A stretch of DNA of 64,000 bases from Lytechinus pictus (GCF_037042905.1 NC_087245.1:9486001-9550000); one strand, 5' to 3'. Positions 2,589 to 33,200 are shown, numbered from the stretch's first letter. Program-made: numbers and translations. Notes: a model not told the origin generated them from the sequence alone.

Positions 2589-5500
2589 TTAGAGAATAAA
2601 AAGACAGAATTAAAGGCATGTTATGATTATGTAAGCGAATGTCTTAAAATCAGATCGAGAGCTTTTTATGAAAGTGGGAAAGGGATACCAGGTACTTCAC
2701 TCAGTTAATGGAATCCAACAAAAAGAAAACAAATAAACGTAAATTATCAATAAGAGATAGAATGACTTTTGATCAAAATGAAATAAGGAACTTTTATAGC
2801 ATGTTATATGCAAAGAGAGACGATAAGATCCTTGATGATGACTTTTTCTCCGATGTAACAAAATTATCGAACGAATCGATGAAATCATGTGAAGGGAAAA
2901 TTACGGAAAGTGAATGTTTAGCTGCCTTAAAACGGATGAAGTTGAATAAATCACCGGGTAATGACGGGCTTATATAGCGTAGAATTTTATATAGTGTTCT
3001 GGCCGCTGATTGGGGATGTTTTAGTTGATGCTTTACATAATGCTTTTATAAGAGGAGAACTTTCGCCATCACAAAGACAAGCAACTATTACTTTAATTCA
3101 TAAAGAAGGAAAGGATCCATTACATATTAAAAATTATCGGCCCATCTCACTGTTAAATGTAGACTACAAGATTTTGGCAAAGGTACTATCAACAAGAATA
3201 AAGGAGGTGTTGCATGAAATAATCAATGTCGACCAAGTAGGATATTTAAAAGGAAGGAATATCGGGGAAGCTTAGCTATTAGACTTATAGATGACATGAT
3301 CTTTCACTCTGTAAAAAATAATATATCGGCATATCTATTGGCCATTGATTTTGAAAAGGCATTTGATTCGGTTTCACATTGTTTTTTTATTTAAAGTATT
3401 GCAAACTTTTGGTTTTGGACCCTCATTTTGTAAATGGATAAGTACTTTGTATAAAAAAGCTGAAAGTTGTGTTTTTAATGGCAGTATTTCAACAGGTTAC
3501 TTTGATATAGGGAGAGGGGTAAGACAAGGAGATCCGTTATCCCCCTATCTTTTTATTTTATGTATTGAAATTTTGGCTAACAGAATAAGACTTGATCCAG
3601 AAATTCACGGAATTAAGTTTGGGAATACAGAAGTTAAGCAAATTCTATACGCAGATGATATGACAATTTTTGTAAAAGACACTCAGTCGATTGAAAAGTT
3701 TGATATGCTGTTTGAATGTTTTGCCGAAACGTCAGGGTTGAGGATGAATAAAGATAAAACCTTTATTATGTTACTGGGACACCATGGAAAAATAGATCCA
3801 ATCTTACCTTTTGGTAAAGTGGAGCAGATGGTTAGGATCTTAGGTATATATATTTTTTTTCATTAGATAAAGAAAGTAAAGTAAGAATAAATTACAAAGA
3901 AATACTTAGTAGAATAAAGAAAATTTTGATGTGGTGGAAGCAAAGGGATTTGACATTAATGGGCAAAATTCAGTTAATTAAAACATTTGTACTATCTAAA
4001 TTGATATACATTTCTTCTCTTACCCTTGTCCCGACATGGGTAATAGAGGATCTTAATACAAAGATCTTTGGATTTTTATGGGGTGGTAAAGATAAAATTA
4101 AAAGAGACATTGTTTATTTAGATTATAAGAATGCTGGTCTAAAAATGACAGATTTTCAGTTATTCATTAAGACACAAAGAATTATGTGGATTAAAAGACT
4201 TATGGGAGAGCCAAAAATGAAATGGAAACAATATTTCAGATACTTAGCAAACGGTATGGGAGGATTGCTAATTTTTATTAGTAACCTCACAATGAATTTG
4301 ATAGGATTTGAACTGCCTGAATTTTATACAGATAGTTAGATGTATGGTTTAATAAGAAATAGTTTTTACTTAAAGAAGAGAAGAATAAAAGAAATGAGAT
4401 CATTTTCAATAATAGGTTCATTACCGTTTGAAAGGACAAACATATTATAATGAAAAGCTGTTTTTGAAGAATATTTATAAATTCCATCATATTGTAGATA
4501 AAGATGGGAAGATGAAGTCTATCGCGACCTTTCAAAAAATGGGTTTGGATCGTTTTGAAATAGAAAAGATACTCGAAATTTTTAATAACATTCCATACTT
4601 TTGGAAGGACTCGCTGAAAAAAAGAGGATCAAAGTTCCATAAATAGTGAGTTAATTTTGGATTTTCAATTAAAGGGCACGATTTTTGACTTGCAAGACAT
4701 CACATCAAAAAGAATATATGATACTCTTGTAAGTATGAAAACGGATATACATAAACCCCAAGCATTTAAAAAGCTTGAAGAAAAATATAATATAATATAA
4801 TAACAAAAACAGCTATTTCTGATATTTTTCTAAGACCACGAAAATCCACTCTGAACAGTAGACTCAGAGAATTTCAATATAAAATATTACACAATATACT
4901 GTACACAAAAATATTTATATTTATTTAAAATGACAACAGATGATTTATGTTCATTCTGCAGTAAAGAAGAAGAAACATAATTTATGATCATATATTTTTT
5001 TCATGTGATAAGATAAAAACTATATGGAAAGAATGTGGGAACATGCTTCAACTCCCTATTATTACAAATGTAGATCAAAAAGGTGTACACGTAGGCGTGG
5101 AAGGTTCAACTAAAGGAGAGGCTCAATTATTAAATCACATAATAATCCTAATAAAGTATATGATTTAAAAAAATAGTAGAAACACAAATGATCCACCGAC
5201 CCTTAACCATATTAAGAAAAATACAAGAAGATAGACTATAGAAGAAAGAAAACTAGCTGAACAGAGAGGTCTTTTAACAAAACCATTTCAGAAAATGGGA
5301 CAAGTTTATTTTCTAGGGATGCTGGGGCAAAGAAAGTTTCAAGCATAGTTATTAAACACTCTAAATGCGAGGGAGATGGTCTGGTCTCTATCGTCGCACC
5401 CCTCCTGGAGTGGGTCGGGGCGGTCATTTTGGGGTGGGCTTTGTGTCTTTGGGGTGCATTGTGGTTCCTTCTGGAGTGAAAATAGAAAAAATAATAATAT

Positions 5501-10871: not shown

Positions 10872-13800
10872 TCAGAGAGTTTGTAATAAATTGTAAAGAT
10901 GTTTTAACTTCTCAACATCCTCTGCTGATATCATTATTTGCTCACAATTCTCTTGGAAAGATCCTTCTTCTGTCTCTTCTTTTCCATCATCTGTTAAACT
11001 CTCCTTTTCCAAATCCTCTGTTTTTGATCCTCCATCATGCACCTCAGGTGTCTCTCCAATATCACAATTCTGTGGAGTCCTATCACTGTTTTTTCGAGTC
11101 TTACCACCAGCTTGTCCCCATTGCTCCAGCTTATTTATTAACTTTGATAGAGCTTCCTTTTCAGATTTATTGAGAAAATCCAATGAAAGGCTGAACCTTC
11201 CTGCTCGTGTAAGACACATCAAAATGTTTGCTACCTTCCCACAATGCCCTTCTTCTGCATCGTTATCGAGTGCTGTGATGATTTCACCAAGAAGACCAAA
11301 ACTTATCTCAGATCGGAAAATTCTGGAAAGTGTTTCCCCGCCTAGATCCAGTAGGTAGGAATAGCAGCTACCTGGAGACTTTTTTCGGTTCCTCCATTCC
11401 TTCGTAAATTCATGCCCATTTTTGGGGATCTTAACCTGTTAATCAAAGAATGAAATTGCATACAAAATTAATTCCAGGTCTGGTAATGATCATAGAACAA
11501 ATTATACAGGATCACACAAAGTAAACGATATGTTCATATGTATGATAAAGAATGTACCAAATAATTCCACTAGAAACTGAGTAATCAGTCATTAGCAAAT
11601 GCCAACAGTGTAGTGTCTAAACAACAATCTTCTAGGACTATACAGTAGCATGTATCCCCTAAGCACAATATAATCATAGTGGATATAGGTTATGATCCAC
11701 ATGCAAGTGGGACTTAAAGAAGTTCATGAGCATCTTCAAGTAAACTTAAGGACGTTCCACAGTTAAAGTGAAATCCATGTCATTTTCACCAAACTTTGCA
11801 CATAGATACTTTAGAACCTTAATATTCGAAATATGCAAAAATTAACATAGGTCCATGTGCTTGATTTTTTGCTATAGAACTTCAAAGTTCACCCAAATTG
11901 ATGTTCTTAAGAATTGCGCATTCAAAATAATTTGGCATTTTTAGACCGCCCAAGATTACTACAATGAGTTTAAACCTGTATTACTCAGTCAAAATACATG
12001 AAAAAGTCATCAACTTTCGCAAGAGAGTTAATAATTGTATCGTTAGAATGGAGAATATATTTATAGTGCTATTTGTTTGCAATTTTAAGTTTAACAGCAC
12101 TGTCAGTTCTTAAAAATGGCGTAAAAGATAACAAAGTCCCAATCTAAAAAATGTGAAATTTCAGTAACAAACTACAAAAGTACAATAAATGCTGCACTTT
12201 ATTCAAAATCCATGTCATTTTCACCAAAATTTGTAGAGTTGTAGAGGAAGGTATACCTAAGAGGAACAAACATTAAAAAATAGGGGTTCATGTGCTTGTT
12301 TTTAAACTATCAGTATTTTTATTAGAGCAAATGTGCTTTTTAAAACACCAAAAATGCGCCGAATGCTTTGTATCTATGTGAAGAAAAAATCAAAACCACT
12401 CTACCATTTATTCAAACTCGGGGTAATATTCGTAATTCTTGGCAGCACTGCAGAGTAAAGTATTTTGAAATTGTAGAGAATCTTTTTTTGAATGGTCCAT
12501 GGAATAATTCAATTTTTTAGCTTCATGAAATAACGTATCGGATCTGCAGTTAAAGTGCAGAAGATGAGAAAATCAGCACATACCCGCAGCTAATTAATCA
12601 CCTGTTCATCCATTGTGACGTCAGCGCGCAGAGTGTAAACTATGTGCAGATCATAATGCGCACAAACATAACTGTGGAACGTCCTTAATTCGTTGCTGAA
12701 ATGACCTGTTTATTGCCATGTATACAAGTGTATTTGTTAGTGAGGATGTCCTCTATGATTAAGCATTTATTTAAGTAGCTATCTTTAAGTAGCTATTTAA
12801 GTAGCTATCTACGATTCAAGTAGCTATCCTTATGTTCAAATATTTTAATAATCAACTTCCTCCGTCCTTTAATAATATGTTTAGGTTTAACAGTTCTGTT
12901 CATTCCTACCCACCCCGCACATCAGGAAACCTCCATCTCACCAACCCTAAGTTATTAATAACTCATAAATCAATTCGACATTATTGTCCTGATATTTGGA
13001 ACAACTTTTCAGACAATAATAAGTCATGTTCAACAATATACTCATTTAAAGCTACTATTAAAAGAAAAACCATCGAATCATATGCATCCTCCTCTTCAAG
13101 TTAATTATTCAACTGCCCTTTACTTCACCCGCACCTCCACCTGCATTGCACCCACTTGATCAATGAAGAAAAAAATTTATGTACTATTTTTACGAGGCCG
13201 CCATCATTTTCAAGCTTAACCGCTCACGATGGCGGTCTCCTGCATTCGTTAACTTTAATTTTCTTTTAATTGAATATTGCTTCTTGTTGAAATTTATTTT
13301 TCATTGCTTTATTGTTTTGTAAAACTTGAAATGTATCACCTAGATGTTATGTTGCATATTTATCTTGAATGCAGAAATAAAATAAAACCAATCAATCAAT
13401 TTAAGGTCTAGGTCTATTGATCCATGCATTTGTCCTACCTTGGTGATAATTGATTGAACCTGACTTCCCGTATCTTGAGCAGCTGTTGGTGCTGTACTGG
13501 ATGATGAAAACGGATTCCAAGGCTGCTGGCGCTTGCTCTGACCAATCTTATCTTTTTTATCAAGAGGCTTGATGTGAGCAGCTGCTACCATGTCCCTACA
13601 CAACAAAGTATCAAGGTTTGTACTTGGTACTAAAGATCTTAAAAACATATCAGTCACTCTACAACTTTATAAAAGAAAGTTGCAATAGGTGGATTCTTGA
13701 TTGTGTGACTACTGGACAATTCAGCAGCAGGTTACATTAGTTTCAATAGTAGTAGGAAGTAGATCAAGTGTAGAATCAAAAGTTGAGAAGATTTGGAGGG

Positions 13801-16706: not shown

Positions 16707-18471
16707 TCTTAACTCCACTTATATATCCTTTGTTGGAAATAATTGTGGCGGGATTTTACTCAGGGTACCTCCTCGCTCTTTTTGTTGTAGAGTTAAGACG
16801 TTTATGCCAGGGGTTTTTTCCGGAATCAGTTTTAGAATCACTATAACTTTTTTTTCATTAATATATCTTTGTATTTTTTTTCATACTAATTTTGAATCAT
16901 TCCAATGCTGTAAATAATTATACACCCCCCCCCAAAAAAAAAAAGATCGATAATAGACGATATTGAGCAAATTATTCACGTTTTTTTGTTCTCACTGCCT
17001 CAATCTAACATAAGCATTCATAAAACATGATCACACAAGCCTTTCGTATAAAGATAAGGTTCAAATTGAAATATTTTGACGGTTTATCTTACTATTTTAC
17101 AACGGATAGTTCATTTTATTAGAACATGCGGTTAAAGTTTAGGTCATAATGACTCGCTTGATAGATGTGAGAGTAAACGCGATCGACATTCAAACAACCG
17201 CATAGAGGCAATTTGCGGTATATGAAATTGTTATTATTATTTAATAAACAAGACGATGATACAATGAAAATCATTGGTATACTCCCTCCTCACTGGTTTT
17301 AGGTCCGACCTTTTCTCCCTGCCTTTTATTTCATTAAAAAGGGAGATCATGACAATTATTTCTTTCACGAATATAATTATAAAACCCCAGTATAACTATG
17401 GAGCTATTACACTGATCTGTATAGAAGATCAGTGGATTGACATATCGAACCAGAACATTAACTTTGTTTCGTCTTGCAGTCGCGCGTGACCTGCAAGTTC
17501 ACTATTGTTCCAAATGCAGCCTCCTCATTGGTCAATCGTTTCGCCTTCTTTGGCAAGCGGTTGCTAGGACATTTCGGTTAGCTCGGCGGTGGCAAAATAT
17601 ATTTTTTCATGGAGCGGATTCAAAACGGATGTCAAACTTCGAAGGCGTTTTTCTCTTGATTTTTATTTTCAAAAGCCCAATTCTTCTTGCATTCTAAGGC
17701 TAATATCTCCACTATTATTTACTCTTAAGGGTCGAGTGATATATCAAATTAAAGGTAAAGAAACAGAGAACAATAATCACTACAAAACTTGGATTTGAAA
17801 AATTCCGAGTTGTCTCTCATTTCGGTGTGACGAGTCACATATAGTAATCAACAAATGTCAACACCATGTCCATGTGACCATTTTTGTAATGAGCCTAGTC
17901 TACATGTAAGTCTCTTATACTCTCTAGACTACTAGTTCCTCAAACTGTGCGAGACGGCTAACGTGATAGCCGACTGTGGAGGCAGAGGAGAAACAAAACA
18001 AAAAAGTTGTACAAAAGTGGCCATAGCCTGGCAGGGTAAGACAGCTGAAATCTGGGCACTAATGCAGTTTCGAAAATATCGAAAATATACGTTACAAATG
18101 ATTTATTCCTTATTTTTTAACATTTATTGCCAGAGATGGAAAACTGGCAGCCGTGTGATGCTGTCCTCTACGTTCGTTGAGTTAGGATTTTTCTGATTAG
18201 AATTTTCCTGGCCAATCAATTCGAGCAACAAGTTCCAAACGCACACACTTATACAAGCGCAATGCAGCTGCACGAATCGCGATATACGGCGATTGTTACA
18301 GACATCTGCAAGGATGATGACGTCATCCAAGAATGGCAAGAGGGCAACTTACGTTGACCAAAGAAAAGATCGAGGATGACTATATTTTGATATCATTTGA
18401 AAGGAATTGGCGGTAACTGCGGTCTTCGGTACGATACTTTCTTGTCAAGTTTGATGTAATTTCTTTTTTAA

Positions 18472-18650
18472 GTGACATTTCATGCACAAAAAACAATCCG
18501 AAAATTGGGTTTCTGCCGCATTTTAGATCTAACATTACTGCTAATACGTTGTCTTTACATACGGGCCAACAACACTTCAGTCTATGTATTGGTGAGTGGA
18601 GCCAACGCAGTTCAGCGGAACAACCAATATACAGAGACTGCTTTTGGTCT
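18472..18650 (+). mobile_element. Older, partial copy of the TAGAC/9-bp-TSD element family
   Basis: Aligns by eye with 19203-19384 and ends TTTTGGTCTA; no matching other end or TSD found. Confidence 0.7.
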
Positions 18651-19131
18651 ACTCGATTTGTAACTGTGCTATCATGGCTATGGACTATTCTAGGTATAAC
18701 ATTGTCTCAGCCAGTCAGCCATGAAGCAGAGGCTTGACTGGGAACCGCTGCACCTGTGCCGGAAGGTTAGTCGGTAACAACCTTGTGCGAGGCGCTTAAT
18801 TGCGGGTAGCCTAGCCATTCCAGTACGATAAGTCCGGTTGGATAGCTGCATTCCCATCTCGACCAACTAAAACTGCTACAAAGTATTCGTTCATCCCAGA
18901 CTAGAATATATTCCCTCTAGTAGCTCTACCCCAAATCAAGAGCACAGACTTTCAAGCAGAACGTACTTCAAATCAGACTACACAAAGCAAAGCAACAGTT
19001 CTCGAATTCTCTCTAATCTAGTCTGAGTCAGCTCAGTCCTCTGTGGCTGTGCCATCAATCAACATCTGCGCACTTCCTGCATGGTTGAACGTTGGCTCCC
19101 ACTGACTGTGCATGTGGGGCATTGCATTGGG

Positions 19132-19384
19132 TAGACAGGAATAACCGTCGTTTCTGGGGATTTATTCAACAATTTCTGACATTTTACTATAATCCTCATA
19201 ATGTGACATTTTATGTACATAAAACCGATCGGAAAATCGGGTTTCCACTGTTAGATCTAACGTAACTGCTAAAATACGTTGTCTGTACGTACGGGCCTCC
19301 AAGCTCTTCAGTCTATGTATTGGTGAGTGAGCCAACGCAGTTCAGCAGAACAACCAAAATACAGAGACTGAAGCTTTTGGTCTA
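19132..19384 (+). mobile_element. Non-autonomous DNA transposon, TAGAC...GTCTA termini, 9-bp TSD (copy X1, 253 bp)
   Basis: TSD TGCATTGGG at 19123-19131 and 19385-19393. Confidence 0.88.
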
Positions 19385-19570
19385 TGCATTGGGCAGTATA
19401 CCCACTGCACAGAAGAAGAAGTCTTACCCAGCCAGGCAATGGCCATGCAACAGTCATGCAAGGAAGAGGGGAGAGGCAGTCAGTGCGCAGCGTCGTGGTC
19501 AGTGATGGTGGCAGCAGCAGAGTCAGGAGCCCACAGCCTCAGCCACTCACACGTATTGCGAGGTTAGTAT

Positions 19571-20241
19571 TAGACCAAAAGCTTCAGTCTCTGTATTTTG
19601 GTTGTTCCGCTGAACTACGTTGGCTCCACTCACCAATACATAGACTGAAGAGCTTGGAGGCCCGTACGTACAGCCAACGTATTAAGTGAACTAACGTTTT
19701 ATAGGTCGCGATTTAAAACTGTTTTTAAGCGAAATTTACAGTTTCATGGTTTCAATTATCAGGGAAATTTAAATAACTTATGTAATTGCGTACCTTGGAC
19801 AGAAGTTATTGAAAAAAATCCTCTGGATGATTGAGAAATCTTTCATCTAAGACATTTTCACCTGAGCTGAGGGTTTTTCTTGCAAGTTGGCATCTTGAAT
19901 GACGTCAATATTAACTTTTTAATGTCTCGATATATTGAATGTCGTCTGCTACCTGTGATGGTAGCGATGTTTCGGTACGCTCGCGTATGGAGCAGATCGT
20001 ATAATATCGAAAGCAATATCGATATCATATTCGTGATTGTTGACGCCCTCTCCGTTCTAGAGTCTAAATTCGATGTGTAAAATTACATCAAACTTTGGAC
20101 TGTGAATTGACAAAAGGGAGGGAGTGAAAACACATGCGAGCCCACACGAACACTCTACCGTCGGTAAATCTAAATGGGGATTACAGTAAAATGTCAGAAA
20201 TTGTTGAATAAATCCCCAGAAACGACGGTTATTCCTGTCTA
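19571..20241 (-). mobile_element. Same family, copy X2 (671 bp, opposite orientation, unique interior)
   Basis: TSD GGTTAGTAT at 19562-19570 and 20242-20250; both end modules are reverse complements of the X1 ends. Confidence 0.88.
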
Positions 20242-21252
20242 GGTTAGTATTAGTAATACTAGTAGTATACTAACCTCGCACCACGAACCGCGTTTGGCAG
20301 TGGATTTCTAACTAGTGGGTCACGCGTGCTGGGATCTCACTTCTTGGGCCCACAACACTCGACTTCTATTGCTTGAATTTTCTGTGCGCGGCGGCATGTA
20401 ATGAACCCTTGGGTGGCCTCAGCCAGCCTCAGGGCGGGGAGCTCCGTCGCGCCGCCGGCCGCGGCGCGCGGCGGCCTCTCTGCCTAGCCCTGGCCTAGGC
20501 AAGGTGACCAGTGCAGTGACTCGTGGCTGACGAAATTTAACCTTGCTTGTGTATCTACGGCCGTTTCTTTACAAGATCAGATCTAGATAAATCTTTGACT
20601 TGGCTCTACTTGTACTTACTTATTCATTCGTTTGATTTACCTCCGTCCGAGTCCGTATACACTGACTAACGTAACTAACGATTTGTTGAAAGAAATTCCT
20701 GTCGCGATTGGTGTTTGTTTATAGACAGCAACGGTTGCACAACGCATGCGCAATGACCTTCGGGACCTTATGGGGGAAATCCCTGTTCTCATCTCTGAAT
20801 CAGGAATGGAGGGTATTTCCAGCCAGGGATAGGCTGCTAGGCAGGAAGACTTACCAGACCCAAGCCAAGCCCAAGGCGAGCTGTGCTGTCGTATTGTTTG
20901 TGATATCACGTCTTTCACGATCCATGGTTTTTAATGACGTTCCTGCATAGATCTAGACATATTATTGGCAGCCAGACTGAATTCTGTTTTTTTTTCTTCA
21001 AAATTCAACTTTCAAGTAGGCCTACCGGCGGTATGGACATTTATTTTTATGATGGCGTCATGAGTGAGTGGTCAAATCTTCTTCTTTTAATTCTTAAAAT
21101 CTTATTTTGTTCTGACTTTTGACAGTGACAGTCTGTGTCACTCTCGTCTCAGTGTGTTAGTTAACTTAACCTGCCCATGGCTTTGGCCTTGCCTTGGCAG
21201 ATTTGTCTTACAAATTTACATTTGTGGAATATGGATGAGTTGATCTGAGACT

Positions 21253-21378
21253 TAGACCAAAAGCTTCAGTCTCTGACTGTATTTTGGTTGTTCCGCTGAA
21301 CTGCATTGGCTCACTCACCATAGTAAAATGTCAGAAATTGTTGAATAAATCCCCAGAAACGACGGTTATTCCTGTCTA
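21253..21378 (-). mobile_element. Same family, copy X3 (126 bp, ends only)
   Basis: TSD TCTGAGACT at 21244-21252 and 21379-21387. Confidence 0.88.
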
Positions 21379-21599
21379 TCTGAGACTTAGCGGGGATCGA
21401 CATCTTTTGATGTGTACTTTATACTCTATGTTTTTATGTCTTAATTGTCTATGAATGATCTCGACCAAAAGCTTCGGTCTCTGTTATGTTGGTTGTTCAG
21501 CTGAACTCCGTTGGCTTCACTCACCAAATACAGAGACCGAAGTTCTAGCGCGATCTGTACAGGGGACTCAATGGCCATATGTTTATGTAGGCCTACTTA

Positions 21600-21641
21600 T
21601 GATCGGATAAAACGGGGAAGTGAATTTGCGCGACAGCCGAG
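21600..21641 (+). other. Candidate non-coding first exon of the caspase gene (start uncertain)
   Basis: Consensus donor GAG|GTAAGT at 21641/21642 in a CpG-containing context with a GGAAGTG motif; plausible acceptors at about 24147-24155 precede the ATG exon. Confidence 0.5.
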
Positions 21642-21652
21642 GTAAGTCACTA

Positions 21653-22625
21653 TTTTTGTCTCACCTGCATAGCAGAGTGAGACTATAGGCGCCGCTTTTC
21701 CGACGGCGACGGCGGCGGCGGCGGCGGCGACGGCGGCGTCAACACCAAATCTTAACCTGAGGTTAAGTTTTTGAAATGACAGCATAACTTAGAAAGTATA
21801 TGGACCTAGTTCATGAAACTTGGCCATAAGGTTAATCAAGTATTACTGAACATCCTGCCTGAGTTTCATGTCACATGACCAAGGTCAAAGGTCATTTAGG
21901 GTCAATGAACTTAGACCATGTTGGGGGAATCAACATCAAAATCTTAACCTAAGGTTAAGTTTTTGAAATGTCATCATAACTTAGAAAATATATGGACCTA
22001 GTTCATGAAACTTATACATAAGGTTAATCAAGTATCACTGAACATCCTGCATGAGTTTCACATCACATGACCAAGGTCAAAGGTCATTTAGGGTCAATGA
22101 ACTTTGGCCGAATTGGGGGTATCTGTTGAATTACCATCATAACTTTGAAAGTTTATGGATCTGATTCATGAAACTTGGACATAATAGTAATCAAGTATTA
22201 CTGAACATCCTGTGCAAGTTTCAGGTCACATGATCAAGGTCAAAGGTCATTTAGGGTCAATGAACTTTGGCCAAATTGGGGTATTTGTTGAATTACAGCC
22301 ATAAATTTGAAAGTGTGTTGGTCTAGTTCATAAAACTTGGACATAATAGTAATCAAGTATCACTGAACATCCTGTGCGAGTTTCAGGTCACATGATCAAG
22401 GTCAAAGGTCATGTAAGGTCAAAGAACTTTGGCCACGTTGGGGGTATTTGTTGAATTGCCATCATATCTCTATAAGTGTATTGGTCTAGTTCATAAAACG
22501 TGGAAATAAGAGTAACCAAGTATCACTGAACATCTTGTGCGAGTTATAGTAGTTTTCAAAATCAGCACTGCTGCTATATTGAATCGCGTGATGCAGGTGA
22601 GACGGCCAGAGGCATTCCACTTGTT
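21653..22625 (+). mobile_element. Helentron-associated / DINE-1-like non-autonomous element with central tandem repeats (copy 1)
   Basis: Subterminal IR GTCTCACCTGCAT (21658) / ATGCAGGTGAGAC (22591); 5' partial IR GTCTCAC..GTGAGAC; (GGC/GAC)n microsatellite; five 160-190 bp central repeats; T-rich flanks and no TSD. Confidence 0.8.
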
Positions 22626-24225
22626 GTTCTTTTTAACTTGATTTTTCTCCGTTTTTTGGCAATTAATGCCAAGAGGGAATATTAATTTGCATTTTGGTCG
22701 GGTTAATTTTCAAAATTTTTATTCATTAAAGACAAAAATTGAAGAGCCCCGATGGGGGGATTTTGCATTGCAAGTCCCCTAATGGTGGCTGCACGCTAGC
22801 GAGCCGTCTGTGTATGAGGAGAAATTTAAAAAAAAAAAAAAAAAGTTAAAAAACTCCTCGAAACAGACGGCTGCCAGCTGTCTATGAATGATCATACTTA
22901 CAACAAACATCTCACTAGAAAAATGTTTATGATTATTTATGAATATGATCAACTATTTGAGCATGTTGAGCAAATTAAAAAAATTATCATTAAGTTCACT
23001 CACACACATGCGAGGTTAGTATGCTATAGTATAACTTATAAGTTGACATTTTCACAGTTTAGTCTATACAAAATCAACTATAATCATGAATACCCAACTG
23101 AAGGCAAGACTGACACAGTGTCACACATATTATACTTTTGGAAGAAGATTGAGCTTGGACAAAAGCTAGACCTGGAAACTTGGCTGCAGCTTTCTGCATT
23201 TTTCCAGTACATCCGGTATTTTAATTAAGGTAGGAAAGAGTTCCATATGCACCCCCCACCAAAAATAACACAAGATTGTTGAAACTTCCAGTTCATTCAC
23301 TTCAGATTTTTCTATCATTTTTTTTTTACTGTTGCTTACCTTAGACTTAGTTGGGACTCAAACTCACCTCGTTTTATTTGTAGTCAAGACCTCTTCCCGC
23401 TATGCTAGCGAGAAGCGCTGATACCGAAATGGGTATTTTAACGATTATCAGCCGATAGTTTTACTAATCTAGACTCACAGACCCTTTACTGACTAAATAA
23501 ACCGATGTCTATGGACAATTACACGCACTAGATCCTGCTCGAAATTTGATGGAATAAAGCCATATTTTGGTTACCTAGAGCGAAGTTCGTGCAGGCTCCA
23601 CTCCACTTCACTACCGCTACACTACACTCCACCTACCCGAACTTCGAGACGGTGAACTCGATGGGAAATCATGTTTATTGTAAAAATTAAAGAAAAATAA
23701 TAAAACGAGAAAGATAAACAACTTAATATCTTACTCTTCACCCGTATTTCACTCCGTATCCATCCTCCGGTTTTCCTCAAAATGTGTGATTTTGGGCCAG
23801 TATCTTTTTCCTCACACGTATTATTCACGGCTGATTTCAAAACATCGCATGCGATCGGTTTGACCTGCGACCGATCGCGATTGCCCTGAGCTTTGTACGT
23901 TGCTATTTTGACACCTGTGACATGATCACAAGAACGGTGTGACATAATGTGCACCACTCGTATTAAGGTCGAGCAGTACTGTACTTGTAATCATTCCGCA
24001 TACTGTGCCAAAATCAGTGCTATTTTGGTCATGATTAATGCAGATAATCATTTTCAGTTAAAAGATTTTTAAGTGGATAATTGTCATCTTTAATAAGGAA
24101 ATAGATGATGTATGTCATGTTCTCTTTTCCATTTCTACCTATTTAGCCCTTTTAGAACGCTGAGAGGACACAAAAAAGACATTTATTTGAAAATTTCATC
24201 TAGTGACTGAATTCCAGATCCAGCC

Positions 24226-27200
24226 ATGGCCTTTCAAACCAGTTACAGTGACAGTGCACTTAGTTCTGATGTTGAAAAGGATGCAAACCCTGGTGCAAAC
24301 TCTATTAAATACCGGACTCTACTGAAGGAAATTGACAATGGATTAGGAGCAAGAGATATGGAGAAGCTGAAGTACTTATGCCAAGACTTGGGTGTTGCCC
24401 CACGGAAATTTGAGAATATGAATAGGGGTATCTACTTGTTTACAGAATTGGAAAAACTTGCATTGGTCACAGCAGATGACATTTCATTGCTGGTACTCCT
24501 GATGCAAGCAATCAGTCGCTATGACCTGGTGAAAAAACTGAAGTCATGGAGCAGCAAGGAAGGAAAGTTGGCCCACATGTTAAGTTCTTACAGGTGAATG
24601 AGTTTTTTGCAGTTTATGTTTACAGTGGGGATAGTATCAGATGAAAACTATCATTGAAATATTCTGAATTCTGAGCAAATTATTTTGAGAATGTTTGTTA
24701 CATTCAAAATTCTCTCTTTCTCATGAATATACAGACAAGGGGTAATGACAAGAATTCTCATGATTAATTTTATCATATTTCAGTCCACCTTCATTTTGCA
24801 ATCTCAATCTTTATTAAAGTACAATCCAAGCAAATATTACATTTTTTATTCTACTTTCATTCATATTTTACCTGCAAGGTTCTCCCATAGTGAATAAAAA
24901 CAGTTCGCTCTGGGTGCAAGGGGGGAGGGGGTTGCAGCAGTTGAATTGTGGACAGGTGCCCTGGCTGAGTGGTCTAAAAAGCTGGACTAGACAATTGAAA
25001 GTCCCGGTGTCTGTGCCCTTGAACAGTGCATTTAATCAATAAGTTCTCTTTTTATCTTGGATTATTATAATGCTGTATGCATTCTTGGTAACTATGTGTG
25101 TAGTTGTAAAAAAAATCACAACACCCTCTAGCAGATTTTTCGTGTAAAATCAGAAACAAAATGTAATTTGTAAAACACATTTTCATGTCATATCCTCCAC
25201 ATAATTACTGTTTTAAGGCATACCGGTACACATTCATATAATAATTTAGTAAATAAGTGAAATAGTGATAGCCACATTTTGGGTAGTTATCACAGCAAAA
25301 AAAAATTTGAAGTCATGAATTAAGCCCCTTGTTTGTTTTATGGTGTTTGCGTTTCTAGGAGATTGATGCTAAGGATATCTGACAGTCTGAGTCGAGACGA
25401 GAGAGACCAATTTAAATTTTATCTCAGTGGAGGTGAAATTCCAATTCCTGTAGCAGCCATTGAGGAATGCACGACACTCTTACAGGTGACAGTTAGAAAG
25501 AAAAATAAACTGAAGTATGTAATTGAATCAATTTTTAACAAATGGCTTGTAAAAGATTCCTCATTTTAGTCTACAGGTACAAATGATAAATAATGGCTAG
25601 AAAACGTACTATTTTACACAAAAATAAGAAATGCCTGATGATTATCTGTTTACTTATTGCTGATGTTCCATTGCTGTCACTCATTTGTTTATGTCATAGA
25701 TCAATATCATTTGACAACAGATGTTCACTGCTTCATACCTGATTTTTTTTTAAATAAAATTTGATGGATAATATTTACTCTAATTTGTTGGAAAACTTGA
25801 GTATTTGGTTTTAACAAATTAGATCATTTATATGGTTTCTCAGGGATGATTTTTAATTTTTTTTATTATTTAGATATTACATTGATTGAATGTAAACATA
25901 AAACTCAGATCCTGGTCATTTTCAAAATGTATGCTACTATGATTTCAAGTTTATTTGAGCCATAATAATGAATTCTTTTTATTCCCTTGGTAGCTCTTTG
26001 TACTAATGGAGAAATACACATTAATTGGCCCGAGAGATCTTGAATACTTCACATCAATCATGCAGTCTATTGGAAACATAGCCATTGTTAAAGAAATTGA
26101 ACAGTATTTTGGTAAGCTTTTGTTTCGCATGAATTATAAAAGAAATGAAAAAAAATTATTGAGGGACTCATTTTTTGTCTCACCTGCATAGCAGAGTGAG
26201 ACTATAGGCGCCGCTTTTCCGACGGCGACGGCGGCGGCGGCGACGGCGGCGACGGCGACGGCGGCGTCAACACCAAATCTTAACCTGAGGTTAAGTTTTT
26301 GAAATGACAGCATAACTTAGAAAGTATATGGACCTAGTTCATGAAACTTGGCCATAAGGTTAATCAAGTATTACTGAACATCCTGCCTGAGTTTCATGTC
26401 ACATGACCAAGGTCAAAGGTCATTTAGGGTCAATGAACTTAGACCATGTTCGGGGAATCAACATCAAAATCTTAACCTAAGGTTAAGTTTTTGAAATGTC
26501 ATCATAACTTAGAAAATATATGGACCTAGTTCATGAAACTTATACATAAGGTTAATCAAGTATCACTGAACATCCTTCATGAGTTTCACATCACATGACC
26601 AAGGTCAAAGGTCATTTAGGGTCAATGAACTTTGGCCGAATTGGGGGTATCTGTTGAATTACCATCATAACTTTGAAAGTTTATGGATCTGATTCATGAA
26701 ACTTGGACATAATAGTAATCAAGTATTACTGAACATCCTGTGCAAGTTTCAGGTCACATGATCAAGGTCAAAGGTCATTTAGGGTCAATGAACTTTGGCC
26801 AAATTGGGGTATTTGTTGAATTACAGCCATAAATTTGAAAGTGTGTTGGTCTAGTTCATAAAACTTGGACATAATAGTAATCAAGTATCACTGAACATCC
26901 TGTGCGAGTTTCAGGTCACATGATCAAGATCAAAGGTCATGTAAGGTCAAAGAACTTTGGCCACGTTGGGGGTATTTGTTGAATTGCCATCATATCTCTA
27001 TAAGTGTATTGGTCTAGTTCATAAAACGTGGAAATAAGAGTAACCAAGTATCACTGAACATCTTGTGCGAGTTATAGTAGTTTTCAAAATCAGCACTGCT
27101 GCTATATTGAATCGCGTGATGCAGGTGAGACGGCCAGAGGCATTCCACTTGTTTAATTTTGAAAGGAGCAATAAAATCTCTCCTAAAACTTGAAGGGGAG

Positions 27201-30200: not shown

Positions 30201-33200
30201 GCTACTATTTTGCAGCAACAAAATCCAGGTATTAAATTTATTTCATACAAACCTTGTCTTGGAAGGAAAAATAAAATATTGTATAGAAAGATCTGAAGCT
30301 CTAATCCCTGTTGAATGTATTGTTATTTTTTTTAATTAGTGATTACTTTATTTATTTGTCATGAAAATACCACAACATAAAATTGTATTTGCTTCTTTGA
30401 ATGAATACTTTTGGCATGATAACTTTCCGTTTGCCAGTTCACATCTATGAACTGAAAGTTGAATACACACATTTATGTATAGAATAACAATTTCCTGTAA
30501 ACCTTTTATGCTTTCATTAAACTCTTTTGATACCATTAGACCTTATATGAACACCTTTTCTTTGTACATGTCAAGTAAGATTATTTAAAATAAAAATAAC
30601 ACATTAATTTCCATTTTTGTAGGCTTTACTTTATAAAAATATTGATTTGTTTCATTTCATATTTGAATACAACAGGTCCCTTTCCACAATTGCCAAAGTA
30701 CAAAATGGACAGGCTCCCTAGAGGATTGTGTATCATTTTCAATGCAGAAAATTTCACAGGATCCAAACTTGACAAACGAGTTGGTACAGAAAAGGATGTT
30801 GGTGAGTGCACAGTTTTGTCCTATACATGCCTCTGCAATCCAGATATCTAATGATATTTAATTTGTCATTTAGAATATTGAGATAAATTGTTGTTTTGTA
30901 TTTTCTTATAATCTAGTATTTGATGATGGCATCATCAACATTGAAATTGTAATCAAGTTCAAGTTTTTGAAATGTCATCATAACTTTGAAAGTATAGATC
31001 TAGTTCATGAAACTTGGAAAGAGTAATCAAGTATCATTGAACAGGTCATTTAGGGTCAATGAACTTGGACCATGTTGGGAAAATCAATATTGTAATCTTA
31101 AACTGAGGTTTAGTTTTTAAAATATCCTAACTTTAAAAGTATATGAATCTAGCTCATATAACTCGGACATAAGAGTAATTAAGTATCACTGATCATCTTT
31201 CATGAGTTTTAGGTCACATGATTTATGTCAGGGGTCATTTAGTTTCAATGAACTTTGACCATGCTGGGGGGATTTGTTGAAACGCCATCATTACTTTAAA
31301 AGTCAATAGATCTAGCTCATGAAACGTGAACATAAGGGTAATCAAGTATCACTGATTGTCTTTCACGTGTCGCAGGATCAAGGTCAAAGGTCATTTAGGG
31401 TCAATGGACCTAGTGTTTTATTATCATTTGAAGTGTGTTTTGTGAATAATTATTAATCTTTAATAGTTTTCAAATTCAGCACCGCTGCTTTATTGAATCG
31501 CATAACACTGGCGAGACTGCCAGAGGTGTTCCACTTGTATAATGCTGTCATAGTCTTCCATCTTTGATATACAACTTCCCCATTCCACTGCACTATTGAG
31601 CTGCCCAGAAATTTATACAATGAACAAATAGGTAAATTGATTTTGTACCTTCATGCTGTACATACATTTTGCGTAAACAGGGACTTACGTTATGCCACAT
31701 ATATGCTGATTGTAGACAATACACTCCACTGATTGCACTAAACTGCATTCTAGCGAGTGCTGGTATGGTATATTTGGATGCTACTAAGCAACCCATAGAA
31801 TGTTATGGGATCCAATCCGAAGCAGTCAGATTACGGAACATTTTCAGAAAAGGTATTATAAAGATTGAACACTGGGGGCAGCATTCACCCTTAAAATCCT
31901 GTTGCTTGTTTTTATCACTGTAGTATCAGCTATATGTGATAAGGAGAATTAGTGCTGAATGCACATGCTAACATCTTTCTAATGTATTAAACACTATATT
32001 AATGTAAAATATTATTTACCTGAATGAGGCATATTGGAGACAAGATATAAACATGTATTTTGTCTGTCTAATTGATTAACTCAGCACAAAATCTGTCACA
32101 ATGACCAAGACAGGATGCAAGTGTATGACCAGGGACCATGATATTCATATACCCTCCTCCGTGAATTTTTCACTTTCCTATTGCGCCTACGTAGTAAATT
32201 ATCAATCCATAATATCCGTATCCCCATTCATCAAACCATGGAGGTAGAATGATCAAACCCAAGCGCAAGTCTTGTGTACGTGTTAAGTGAATGCCTGCAC
32301 TGTGCATGATGTGCACCTGCACTGTACACACTTTACATCACAATTACTTAGCCAGCCCAGGATTACTTCATCAAGTTCATGAATAATGTGAAATTGGACG
32401 TACCAACAGGCAAACAGACATAATTGCTACAAATGATAGCTTCAATGCTACATCACATAGCTGTAGACATTACATGTATATAATAATAAAAAAAATATTG
32501 ACTGGCTTTAATTTTCAGGAGATACCACAACATATTTCCCTCAGTAGTCTCATATTGCCCTCATTATCACTCGGGGAAAAATGAGACTACTTCGGGGAAG
32601 TATATGTATGGTATCTCCCTCAAAGCTAGTCAAATGAGTCAGTTTTATATATAAATGATACTGAGAAGAGAACACAAAAACATACCGAGGGAAAGTGTTC
32701 AAGTAATATGGGCATTCAAATACACTGTTGCTACATAACTAGTTCAATGTGTAGGGTAACAATTTTGAATTTTTTAAAATACTTTTTGTTTGTTTGTTTT
32801 TGTATTAGAAGACTATTACAATTTTGAAATTTTGATCCATGTCAAACTCTGACATCTATTCATCTTATCTCAATATTTTGACAGAGGCATTGCGGAACAC
32901 TTTTCAAAATAATCTGAGATTAAAAACCCTTGTGAAGAATGACCCGACTCGGCAAACATACGTTGATTGCCTGCAAGAGATTGCAAGAATGGATCATTCT
33001 GAGTATGATTGTTTTGTCTGCGTCATCTTATCTCATGGATCTAAAGGCTGTGTGTATGGTACTGATGGAAGACAGATCCAGATTGATGCATTGACAGGTG
33101 TGTATAATGCTATACTTTCATCATAAAGCAGTGTTGTATGCAGGACGAAAGGCCAAGACTTGGTTCTGAGGAGAAGGAAAATTCCACGTAATTGTCTTTG

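What the first reader, a model, noticed from the sequence alone, without database searches (positions are those of the whole stretch)
18472..21545. Hotspot of a DNA-transposon family with asymmetric ends, 5-bp TIR (TAGAC...GTCTA), exact 9-bp TSDs and variable interiors
Seen: three complete insertions within 2.3 kb (19132-19384, 19571-20241, 21253-21378), each with a different perfect 9-bp TSD, plus two older partial copies (18472-18650, about 21462-21545). All complete copies share an essentially invariant 55-bp end (TAGACAGGAATAACCGTCGTTTCTGGGGATTTATTCAACAATTTCTGACATTTTACT) and an unrelated other end (TAGACCAAAAGCTTCAGTCTCTG...). Their interiors differ: about 80 bp, about 500 bp and none. I saw no copy elsewhere in the 64 kb. 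Known, from memory: 9-bp TSDs typify Mutator/MULE and the AcademH lineage, and TAG..CTA termini fit Academ better. Inference: independent recent insertions with strong regional targeting or local hopping into the regulatory interval between two divergent genes. The 126-bp copy defines the minimal cis-requirements.
Basis: partly seen in the sequence, partly recalled or inferred. Interest (0 to 1): 0.72.

Follow-up and report, generated by a model that had tools for sequence, protein, structure and literature searches.

The report
Sea-urchin transposon insertion hotspot
Five separate insertions of small, gene-less cut-and-paste jumping genes have piled up in the 5-kb control region between two sea-urchin genes. 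The elements and the pile-up are real, but they belong to an abundant, ordinary kind of transposon whose enzyme I could not identify.

Summary
Three complete TAGAC...GTCTA elements (19132-19384, 19571-20241, 21253-21378) each carry a different exact 9-bp target duplication; 0.003 such pairs are expected by chance.

They are internal-deletion derivatives of two abundant ~850-bp non-coding subfamilies, A and C. About 1,340 copies of the left end and 3,900 of the right end occur in this 811-Mb sea-urchin genome.

Both "partial copies" were mis-delimited:
- One is a truncated old A copy, 18073-18651.
- The other is the end of a complete element of a third family, D (21461-22884, TSD TGAATGATC), with a nested insertion.

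So five independent insertions from at least four source lineages lie within 4.8 kb, in a CpG-rich interval between divergently oriented CCDC103-like and caspase-8-like genes.

Clustering is a property of the whole group: 18 neighbour gaps of 6 kb or less on contig 1, against 2 expected. Insertion sites share a palindromic motif, KCWN-N9-NWGM, which the element termini themselves mimic.

The 126-bp form's deletion junction recurs on three other contigs, so that form is mobile.

No autonomous copy was found. The superfamily (AcademH, Mutator or P-like) is unresolved.

Two other first-reader notes in this scan describe TAGAC..GTCTA elements elsewhere in this genome.

The parts
18073..18651 (+). 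Old copy of subfamily A, truncated on the left (matches A positions 250-853 at about 75%). The right terminus ...GGTCTA is at 18651. No left end.
19132..19384 (+). Copy 1: subfamily A with a 596-bp internal deletion (A 1-68 joined to A 665-853, up to 4 bp of microhomology). TSD TGCATTGGG at 19123-19131 and 19385-19393. The deletion junction is unique in the genome.
19571..20241 (-). Copy 2: subfamily C (~835 bp canonical) with an internal deletion of about 170 bp. 1.8% from the C consensus. TSD GGTTAGTAT at 19562-19570 and 20242-20250.
21253..21378 (-). Copy 3: 126-bp mini-element (A 1-59 joined to about the last 67 bp; the inner hairpin arm is missing). TSD TCTGAGACT at 21244-21252 and 21379-21387. 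The same junction is present on three other contigs.
21461..22884 (-). Complete element of sister family D (canonical ~446 bp). Right-end hairpin at 21461-21547 (TAGAC mutated to TCGAC). Left end TAGACAGCTGGCAGCC... at 22884. TSD TGAATGATC at 21452-21460 and 22885-22893.
   Evidence: place 21462 reads A in other copies
21656..22623 (.). Unrelated 968-bp repeat with 163-192-bp internal tandem repeats, nested inside the D element. Not part of the TAGAC group.
   Evidence: D1; joint 21655>22624
20251..20750 (.). CpG-rich, GC-rich patch (GC up to 0.60, CpG o/e 1.0-1.4, against 0.57 for the window). Candidate shared promoter region between the two genes.
   Evidence: low plus-strand-type RNA coverage starts near 20758
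13340..13657 (-). Exon of the left-hand gene (Dynein_attach_N, CCDC103-like), minus strand.
24226..24597 (+). ATG/DED exon of the right-hand caspase-8-like gene, plus strand. Its caspase domain exon is at 32839-33126.

Best explanation
The stretch is an insertion hotspot for a group of non-autonomous, DDE-type cut-and-paste DNA transposons (the 'TAGAC group': subfamilies A and C, ~850 bp, and family D, ~446 bp) of a sea urchin. Earlier scan notes name the species as Lytechinus pictus.

How it works, as inferred:
- A transposase supplied in trans, not identified here, recognises two different ends. The left end reads TAGACAG..CCGTC.GTTTC. The right end reads TAGACCAAAAGCTTC(A/G)GTCTCTG.
- It cuts the target with a 9-bp stagger.
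- It prefers a 17-bp palindromic site, KCWN-N9-NWGM.

Five independent insertions from at least four source lineages landed within 4.8 kb of the CpG-rich interval between a divergently oriented CCDC103-like gene and a caspase-8-like gene.

The short forms are internal-deletion products of the kind left by interrupted gap repair. The 126-bp form has itself been mobilised.

Shown: the elements, TSDs, copy numbers, deletion relationships, target motif, family-wide clustering and the mobility of the 126-bp form. Inferred: a DDE mechanism, open-chromatin or regional targeting, and gap-repair origin of the deletions.

Open: which superfamily. My odds are AcademH about 0.35, Mutator about 0.30, P-like about 0.15, other about 0.20.
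For: - TSDs: there are three exact 9-bp TSDs plus the D element's. Of 27 informative bounded copies (29 found), 22 have an exact 9-bp TSD, one has a single mismatch and two have 8 bp.
- Abundance: 1,340 left ends and 3,902 right ends.
- Canonical sizes: 853-bp A and 835-bp C, which share only about 81-106 bp on the left and about 113 bp on the right.
- Age: copies lie 0.2-4% from their consensus.
- Window copies: they are deletion derivatives of A and C.
- 126-bp form: its junction is found on C11, C14 and C20.
- Target motif: C at -3 in 21 of 24 sites and G at +3 in 14 of 24.
- Clustering: 7 gaps of 6 kb or less against 0.66 expected for left ends on C1+C2. For right ends on C1 the figures are 18 against 2.0, and clusters mix A-type and D-type ends.
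- Gene context: divergent gene orientation and a CpG-rich patch.
- Independent contigs from run X1 cross the junctions at 21253 and 22884 without a difference.
- No tRNA or Rfam match.
- No ORF in the long copies; these are A copies with nested foreign insertions.
Against: - No autonomous partner was found, so the enzyme and the DDE mechanism are inferred from the fixed TSD length alone.
- Targeting cannot be separated from preferential retention without polymorphism data. No DNA run of the same species was available, and no empty-site joint was seen.
- Transcription start sites of the two genes were not mapped.
- The sampled copies were chosen by similarity to the window copies, so family age is biased towards young.
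Confidence: 0.75

Rival explanations
1. Local hopping. One donor element near the locus transposed repeatedly to linked sites, and the cluster is its progeny.
For: Cut-and-paste elements such as P and Ac favour linked sites (established knowledge). Copy 3's retained parts are a subset of copy 1's. Neighbour pairs within a few kb are common family-wide.
Against: - The five insertions belong to A (two different deletion forms), C, D and an old A.
- Copy 3 belongs to a 126-bp sublineage also present on three other contigs.
- Copy 1 carries a private substitution that copy 3 lacks.
- Clusters elsewhere mix A-type and D-type ends.
Confidence: 0.15
2. Retention bias. Insertion is near-random, but copies survive preferentially in tolerant intergenic or promoter-distal DNA, which produces apparent hotspots.
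For: The cluster includes an old copy (75% identity) beside young ones, so the interval has tolerated insertions for a long time.
Against: - The young copies (about 1-3% divergence) are too closely spaced: three within 2.3 kb, where about 0.01 such triples are expected genome-wide.
- There is a strong sequence motif at insertion sites.
- Two tail-to-tail pairs lie exactly 9 bp apart. This argues for choice at insertion.
Confidence: 0.15
3. The group is the non-autonomous progeny of AcademH (helicase-carrying Academ) elements.
For: AcademH makes 9- or 10-bp TSDs (PMC10045372). Earlier scan notes, which are unchecked, report an intact AcademH and a TAGAC-ended element with a RecQ-like remnant in this genome.
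Against: - No 10-bp TSD was seen, but two 8-bp TSDs were.
- The one young RecQ-bearing element whose end I could see stops at TTATTCAAATC..., not TAGAC.
- None of the 32 RecQ-family loci held (L048-L079) has a TAGAC-type end.
- No RecQ-like hit falls inside the three long end-pairs on contig 1.
Confidence: 0.35
4. The group is mobilised by a Mutator-like (MULE) or a P-like transposase.
For: - A 9-bp TSD is typical of Mutator.
- MULE domains in open frames of 723-894 aa exist in the genome.
- The P-superfamily MITE BuT5 is a close structural analogue. It is ~1 kb, has a 3-bp TIR plus sub-TIR and a mix of 8- and 9-bp TSDs, and shares only its ends with its master (PMC3698922).
- From established knowledge, P elements need unlike 5' and 3' ends, favour promoters and leave deletion derivatives.
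Against: - Only 17 MULE-domain matches genome-wide, none on contigs 1-2 where ends were listed.
- Mutator TIRs are usually long.
- No P-like element is among the scan notes I saw.
Confidence: 0.45
5. Assembly artefact, or a local duplication, created the repeated ends.
For: Repeat-rich interval. No read set spans it whole.
Against: - Different TSDs, orientations, subfamilies and deletion breakpoints.
- Contigs from another run match junctions 21034-21307 and 22858-23168 with no difference.
Confidence: 0.02

Closest known systems
BuT5, the MITE of the divergent P element of the Drosophila repleta group (PMC3698922)
   Same: About 1 kb and non-coding. Only a 3-5-bp terminal inverted repeat, followed by a short sub-terminal box. 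TSDs mostly 9 bp with some 8 bp. Shares only its two ends (about 100 bp and about 260 bp) with its master. Short deletion derivatives are common.
   Different: Terminal sequences are unrelated. The master element here is unknown. Here one end carries an ~80-bp hairpin. P-type transposase genes were not searched in this genome.
AcademH transposons (Kojima 2020, as cited in PMC10045372)
   Same: 9-bp TSD. Earlier scan notes report that AcademH elements are present and apparently active in this genome.
   Different: No 10-bp TSDs. No helicase or Academ DDE remnant in any copy examined. The RecQ-bearing element end seen here is not TAGAC.
Mutator/MULE elements and their deletion derivatives
   Same: 9-bp TSD. 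Non-random bases flanking the TSD. Preference for gene 5' regions. Non-TIR MULEs exist. All of this is established knowledge and was not tested here.
   Different: Usually have long TIRs. Mu moves mostly to unlinked sites. MULE domains are rare in this genome (17 matches).
P-element and Ac/Ds insertion hotspots and local transposition
   Same: Repeated independent insertions within a few kb of promoters. Deletion derivatives from interrupted gap repair. Palindromic target pattern extending about 3 bp beyond the TSD, as for P.
   Different: Here several distinct non-autonomous families share the hotspot. The element termini themselves reproduce the flanking target motif.

Membership tests
Non-autonomous cut-and-paste (DDE-type) DNA transposon / MITE-like | TSD of fixed length at every copy | tested here: met
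   22 exact 9-bp, one with 1 mismatch and two 8-bp among 27 informative copies. Four in the window.
Non-autonomous cut-and-paste (DDE-type) DNA transposon / MITE-like | Conserved termini, no coding capacity, many dispersed copies | tested here: met
   1,340 and 3,902 end matches. No ORF of note in A or C.
Non-autonomous cut-and-paste (DDE-type) DNA transposon / MITE-like | An autonomous master sharing the ends | tested here: inconclusive
   Not found. Long copies L034 and L035 are A copies with nested foreign insertions.
AcademH | TSD of 9 or 10 bp | tested here: inconclusive
   9 bp dominant, none of 10 bp, two of 8 bp. Criterion from PMC10045372.
AcademH | Master encodes an Academ DDE transposase plus an SF2/RecQ-like helicase | tested here: inconclusive
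   RecQ-like loci exist. None of those I hold has TAGAC-type ends. There is no Pfam model for the Academ DDE (PMC5751038).
Mutator / MULE | TSD of 9 bp (range 8-11) | tested here: met
Mutator / MULE | Master encodes a MULE-domain transposase; usually long TIRs | tested here: inconclusive
   17 PF10551 matches, some in open frames of 723-894 aa. None could be linked to TAGAC ends. The TIR here is 5 bp plus a short box.
P superfamily | TSD of 7-9 bp; unlike 5' and 3' ends; THAP-type transposase | not tested
   TSD length and end asymmetry fit.
SINE / tRNA-derived retroposon | Pol III promoter or tRNA/7SL/5S head, 3' tail, variable TSD | tested here: not met
   No tRNA or Rfam match. Fixed 9-bp TSD, no tail.

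The most novel reading that the evidence does not exclude
The element termini (...TCTA and TAGA...) reproduce the bases the transposase prefers just outside its 9-bp target (KCWN-N9-NWGM). Every insertion would then rebuild a full target at both of its TSD copies and seed further insertions. This would explain stacked elements exactly 9 bp apart, and part of the clustering. Together with the unlike ends, it could mark a transposase lineage that has not been characterised.
Probability: 0.2. Interest if true: 0.55.

Novelty: new member of a known kind. Interest (0 to 1): 0.3.

Why it matters
This is a well-bounded, young and abundant non-autonomous transposon group in a sea-urchin model species. 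It offers:
- a defined mini-element of 126 bp that has moved;
- a clear 17-bp target motif;
- strong clustering in CpG-rich intergenic DNA.

That makes it usable for finding the responsible transposase and for asking whether such elements reshape promoters, here that of a caspase-8-like gene. It is not a new kind of system.

Tried and rejected
**Search for an autonomous master**
- Copies of 3.4 and 4.25 kb (L034, L035) are A copies with nested foreign elements.
- The 'no-pair' copies are truncated A copies. Two of them sit inside a LINE reverse-transcriptase ORF.
- A 'not-A, not-C' junction pattern at the right end gave 0 hits.
- RecQ family loci, zf-AD (no match) and MULE gave nothing that could be linked to TAGAC ends.
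- Long end-pairs on contig 1 were found only from coordinates.

**Literature**
- The AcademH paper itself is not held.

**Reads and other collections**
- Empty sites and polymorphism were sought with reads. No DNA run of the same species label was offered, and repeats swamped the tables.
- The metagenome scan for the left end found nothing.
- Look-up of earlier findings by sequence was blank.

**Rejected readings**
- SINE.
- Tandem or segmental duplication: the TSDs and orientations differ.
- The hairpin as an essential cis element: the mobile 126-bp form lacks its inner arm.

Full report
**1. Observation**

Direct reading of 18300-21800 and the repeat finder show three elements bounded by TAGAC...GTCTA:
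- 19132-19384 (253 bp), TSD TGCATTGGG
- 19571-20241 (671 bp, inverted), TSD GGTTAGTAT
- 21253-21378 (126 bp, inverted), TSD TCTGAGACT

A scan of all 833 TAGAC/GTCTA pairs in the window found exactly these three with a perfect 9-bp duplication. By chance 0.003 are expected. The left end is 59/59 identical between copies 1 and 3, and 97% identical over 68 nt with copy 2. Neither end occurs elsewhere in the 64 kb.

**2. What the elements are**

The window is C1:9486001-9550000 of an 811-Mb assembly. Earlier scan notes call it the sea urchin Lytechinus pictus.

- The left-end 28-mer occurs 1,340 times in the genome with up to 2 mismatches. The right-end 23-mer occurs 3,902 times.
- Typical copies are not short. 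Among loci returned for copy 1, the two ends lie about 850 bp apart with 9-bp TSDs. This is subfamily A; L007 at 853 bp is an example.
- Copy 2's interior defines a second subfamily, C, of about 835 bp.
- A and C share only about 81-106 bp on the left and about 113 bp on the right.
- Copy 1 is A 1-68 joined to A 665-853.
- Copy 3 is A 1-59 joined to about the last 67 bp.
- Copy 2 is C with an internal deletion of about 170 bp.
- Sampled copies lie 0.2-4% from their consensus. That sample is biased towards young copies.
- Neither subfamily has coding capacity.
- There is no tRNA or Rfam match.

**3. The two 'partial copies'**

The left one extends to 18073. It is an old (75% identity) A copy truncated on the left.

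The right one is the hairpin end of a complete element of a third family, D.
- The canonical D copy is L020:868-1313 (446 bp), with TSD GGCAGAGCC.
- The window copy runs from 21461 to 22884 and has a perfect TSD, TGAATGATC.
- Its terminal TAGAC is mutated to TCGAC.
- A 968-bp unrelated repeat is nested at 21656-22623. Reads from other D copies skip exactly that insert, and they read A at 21462.
- D's left end (TAGACAGCTGGCAGCCGTCTGTTTC) resembles that of A/C (TAGACAGGAATAACCGTCGTTTC).
- Its right end is the same ~80-bp hairpin with one two-sided change in the arms (CAG/CTG against CGG/CCG).

Five independent insertions therefore lie between 18073 and 22884.

**4. Anatomy of the ends**

- The ends are unlike beyond TAGAC. 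However, each has a GTC(T) box 11-12 nt inside the terminus, which forms a small terminal palindrome.
- The right end folds as a hairpin. As single-stranded DNA it gives z = -3.6 (A-type) and z = -4.4 (D-type).
- The 126-bp form lacks the inner arm of that hairpin.

**5. Mobility of the mini-element**

A 30-mer across copy 3's deletion junction occurs exactly on C11, and with two mismatches on C14 and C20. The deletion therefore came before transposition, and at most 59 bp of left end plus at most 67 bp of right end suffice in cis. It also follows that the hairpin is dispensable.

Copy 1's junction is unique in the genome. It may have arisen in place by interrupted gap repair; that is an inference.

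I compared the coordinate lists by hand for C1:0-29.2 Mb. The 32 left ends there pair as follows:

| Class | Count |
|---|---|
| Canonical, 828-840 bp | 7 |
| Tiny, 113-150 bp (includes window copy 3) | 6 |
| Window copies 1 and 2 (253 and 671 bp) | 2 |
| 1.2-1.6 kb | 5 |
| Long candidates (5.45, 8.05, 17.6 kb) | 3 |
| Unpaired | 9 |

**6. Target site**

- Of 27 informative bounded copies (29 found), 22 have an exact 9-bp TSD, one has a single mismatch and two have 8 bp.
- Twenty-four reconstructed empty sites give the motif K-C-W-N [9 bp] N-W-G-M.
- C at -3 occurs in 21/24 sites and G at +3 in 14/24. Within the TSD, A occurs at position 4 in 17/24.
- The last four bases of the element (TCTA) and the first four (TAGA) fit this flank motif. 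An inserted element therefore rebuilds a full target at both TSD copies. That is an inference.
- In keeping with it, two tail-to-tail pairs on C1 have exactly 9 bp between their ends: 9671041/9671073 and 20753822/20753854.

**7. Hotspot**

- Left ends listed on C1 and C2 show 7 neighbour gaps of 6 kb or less, against 0.66 expected. Without this locus there are 5 (P = 0.0005).
- A triple within 2.3 kb is expected about 0.01 times genome-wide.
- Right ends on C1 show 18 such gaps against 2.0 expected, and clusters often mix A-type and D-type ends.
- The window's five insertions come from A (two different deletion forms, one belonging to a dispersed 126-bp lineage), C, D and an old A. Regional targeting therefore fits better than repeated hopping from one donor.
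- Gene context: a Dynein_attach_N exon on the minus strand at 13340-13657; the DED and caspase exons of a caspase-8-like gene on the plus strand from 24226; and a CpG-rich patch at about 20250-20750.
- Transcription start sites were not mapped.

**8. Reads**

- No DNA run of the same species label was offered.
- Contigs from run X1 match 21034-21307 and 22858-23168 without a difference. This supports two junctions.
- The families are also at very high depth in DNA runs of a second species label.
- No empty-site joint was seen, but repeats swamp the tables. Polymorphism is therefore untested.

**9. Which transposase**

- Long copies with both ends are A copies carrying nested foreign elements.
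- Two young RecQ-bearing copies (L062, L063; 98-99% alike) end at ...TTGAATAA, not GTCTA.
- None of the 32 RecQ-family loci held (L048-L079) has a TAGAC-type end.
- No RecQ-like or MULE hit lies in the long end-pairs on C1.
- AcademH gives 9-10-bp TSDs (PMC10045372).
- The P-superfamily MITE BuT5 gives 8-9-bp TSDs with a 3-bp TIR plus sub-TIR (PMC3698922).
- P-type families could not be searched.
- The superfamily stays open.

**10. Verdict**

This is a real, well-bounded and ordinary kind of element in a real insertion hotspot. Its classification is untested.

Noticed in passing
window 21656-22623 (and L062:2506-3438, L044:3029-3377): A 968-bp repeat with 163-192-bp internal tandem units is nested in the D element. 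Its family has very high one-sided RNA depth (about 4,000 reads per bin in X21). It is probably the '1-kb direct repeat' another reader noted around the caspase DED exons.
   Followed up: partly
A and C interiors, e.g. window 18318-18330 and 19890-19905; L007, L040: Both unrelated interiors carry the CRE palindrome TGACGTCA (13 of 14 A copies, 7 of 8 C copies). A also has CCAAT-like and TATA-like boxes next to it. The elements may spread promoter-like modules.
   Followed up: partly
G000 C1:9671041/9671073 and C1:20753822/20753854: Two pairs of right ends on opposite strands with exactly 9 bp between them. That is, two elements share one target duplication.
   Followed up: partly
L062 and L063 (C5:55955493-55958930, C2:8454675-8458115): Two 98-99% identical copies of a RecQ-helicase-bearing element. 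Their shared sequence ends about 400 bp upstream of the helicase start at ...TATAAAGATTTGAATAA. This is a young helicase-carrying transposon with non-TAGAC ends.
   Followed up: partly
L009:753-1484 and L010:1747-2310: A truncated A right end sits directly after a LINE reverse-transcriptase ORF (YADD motif). Both loci have the same flanks, so a LINE copy carrying the fragment was duplicated.
   Followed up: partly
L003:2370-2765: An A copy is inserted inside the left end of a D element (TSD AACAGACGG lies in D's terminal box).
   Followed up: no
window 2961-3866: Broken LINE reverse-transcriptase ORFs (RVT_1).
   Followed up: no
whole genome: Only 17 MULE-domain matches in 811 Mb, several of them in open frames of 723-894 aa (C18:17463424, C4:3098337, C5:27312124).
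   Followed up: no
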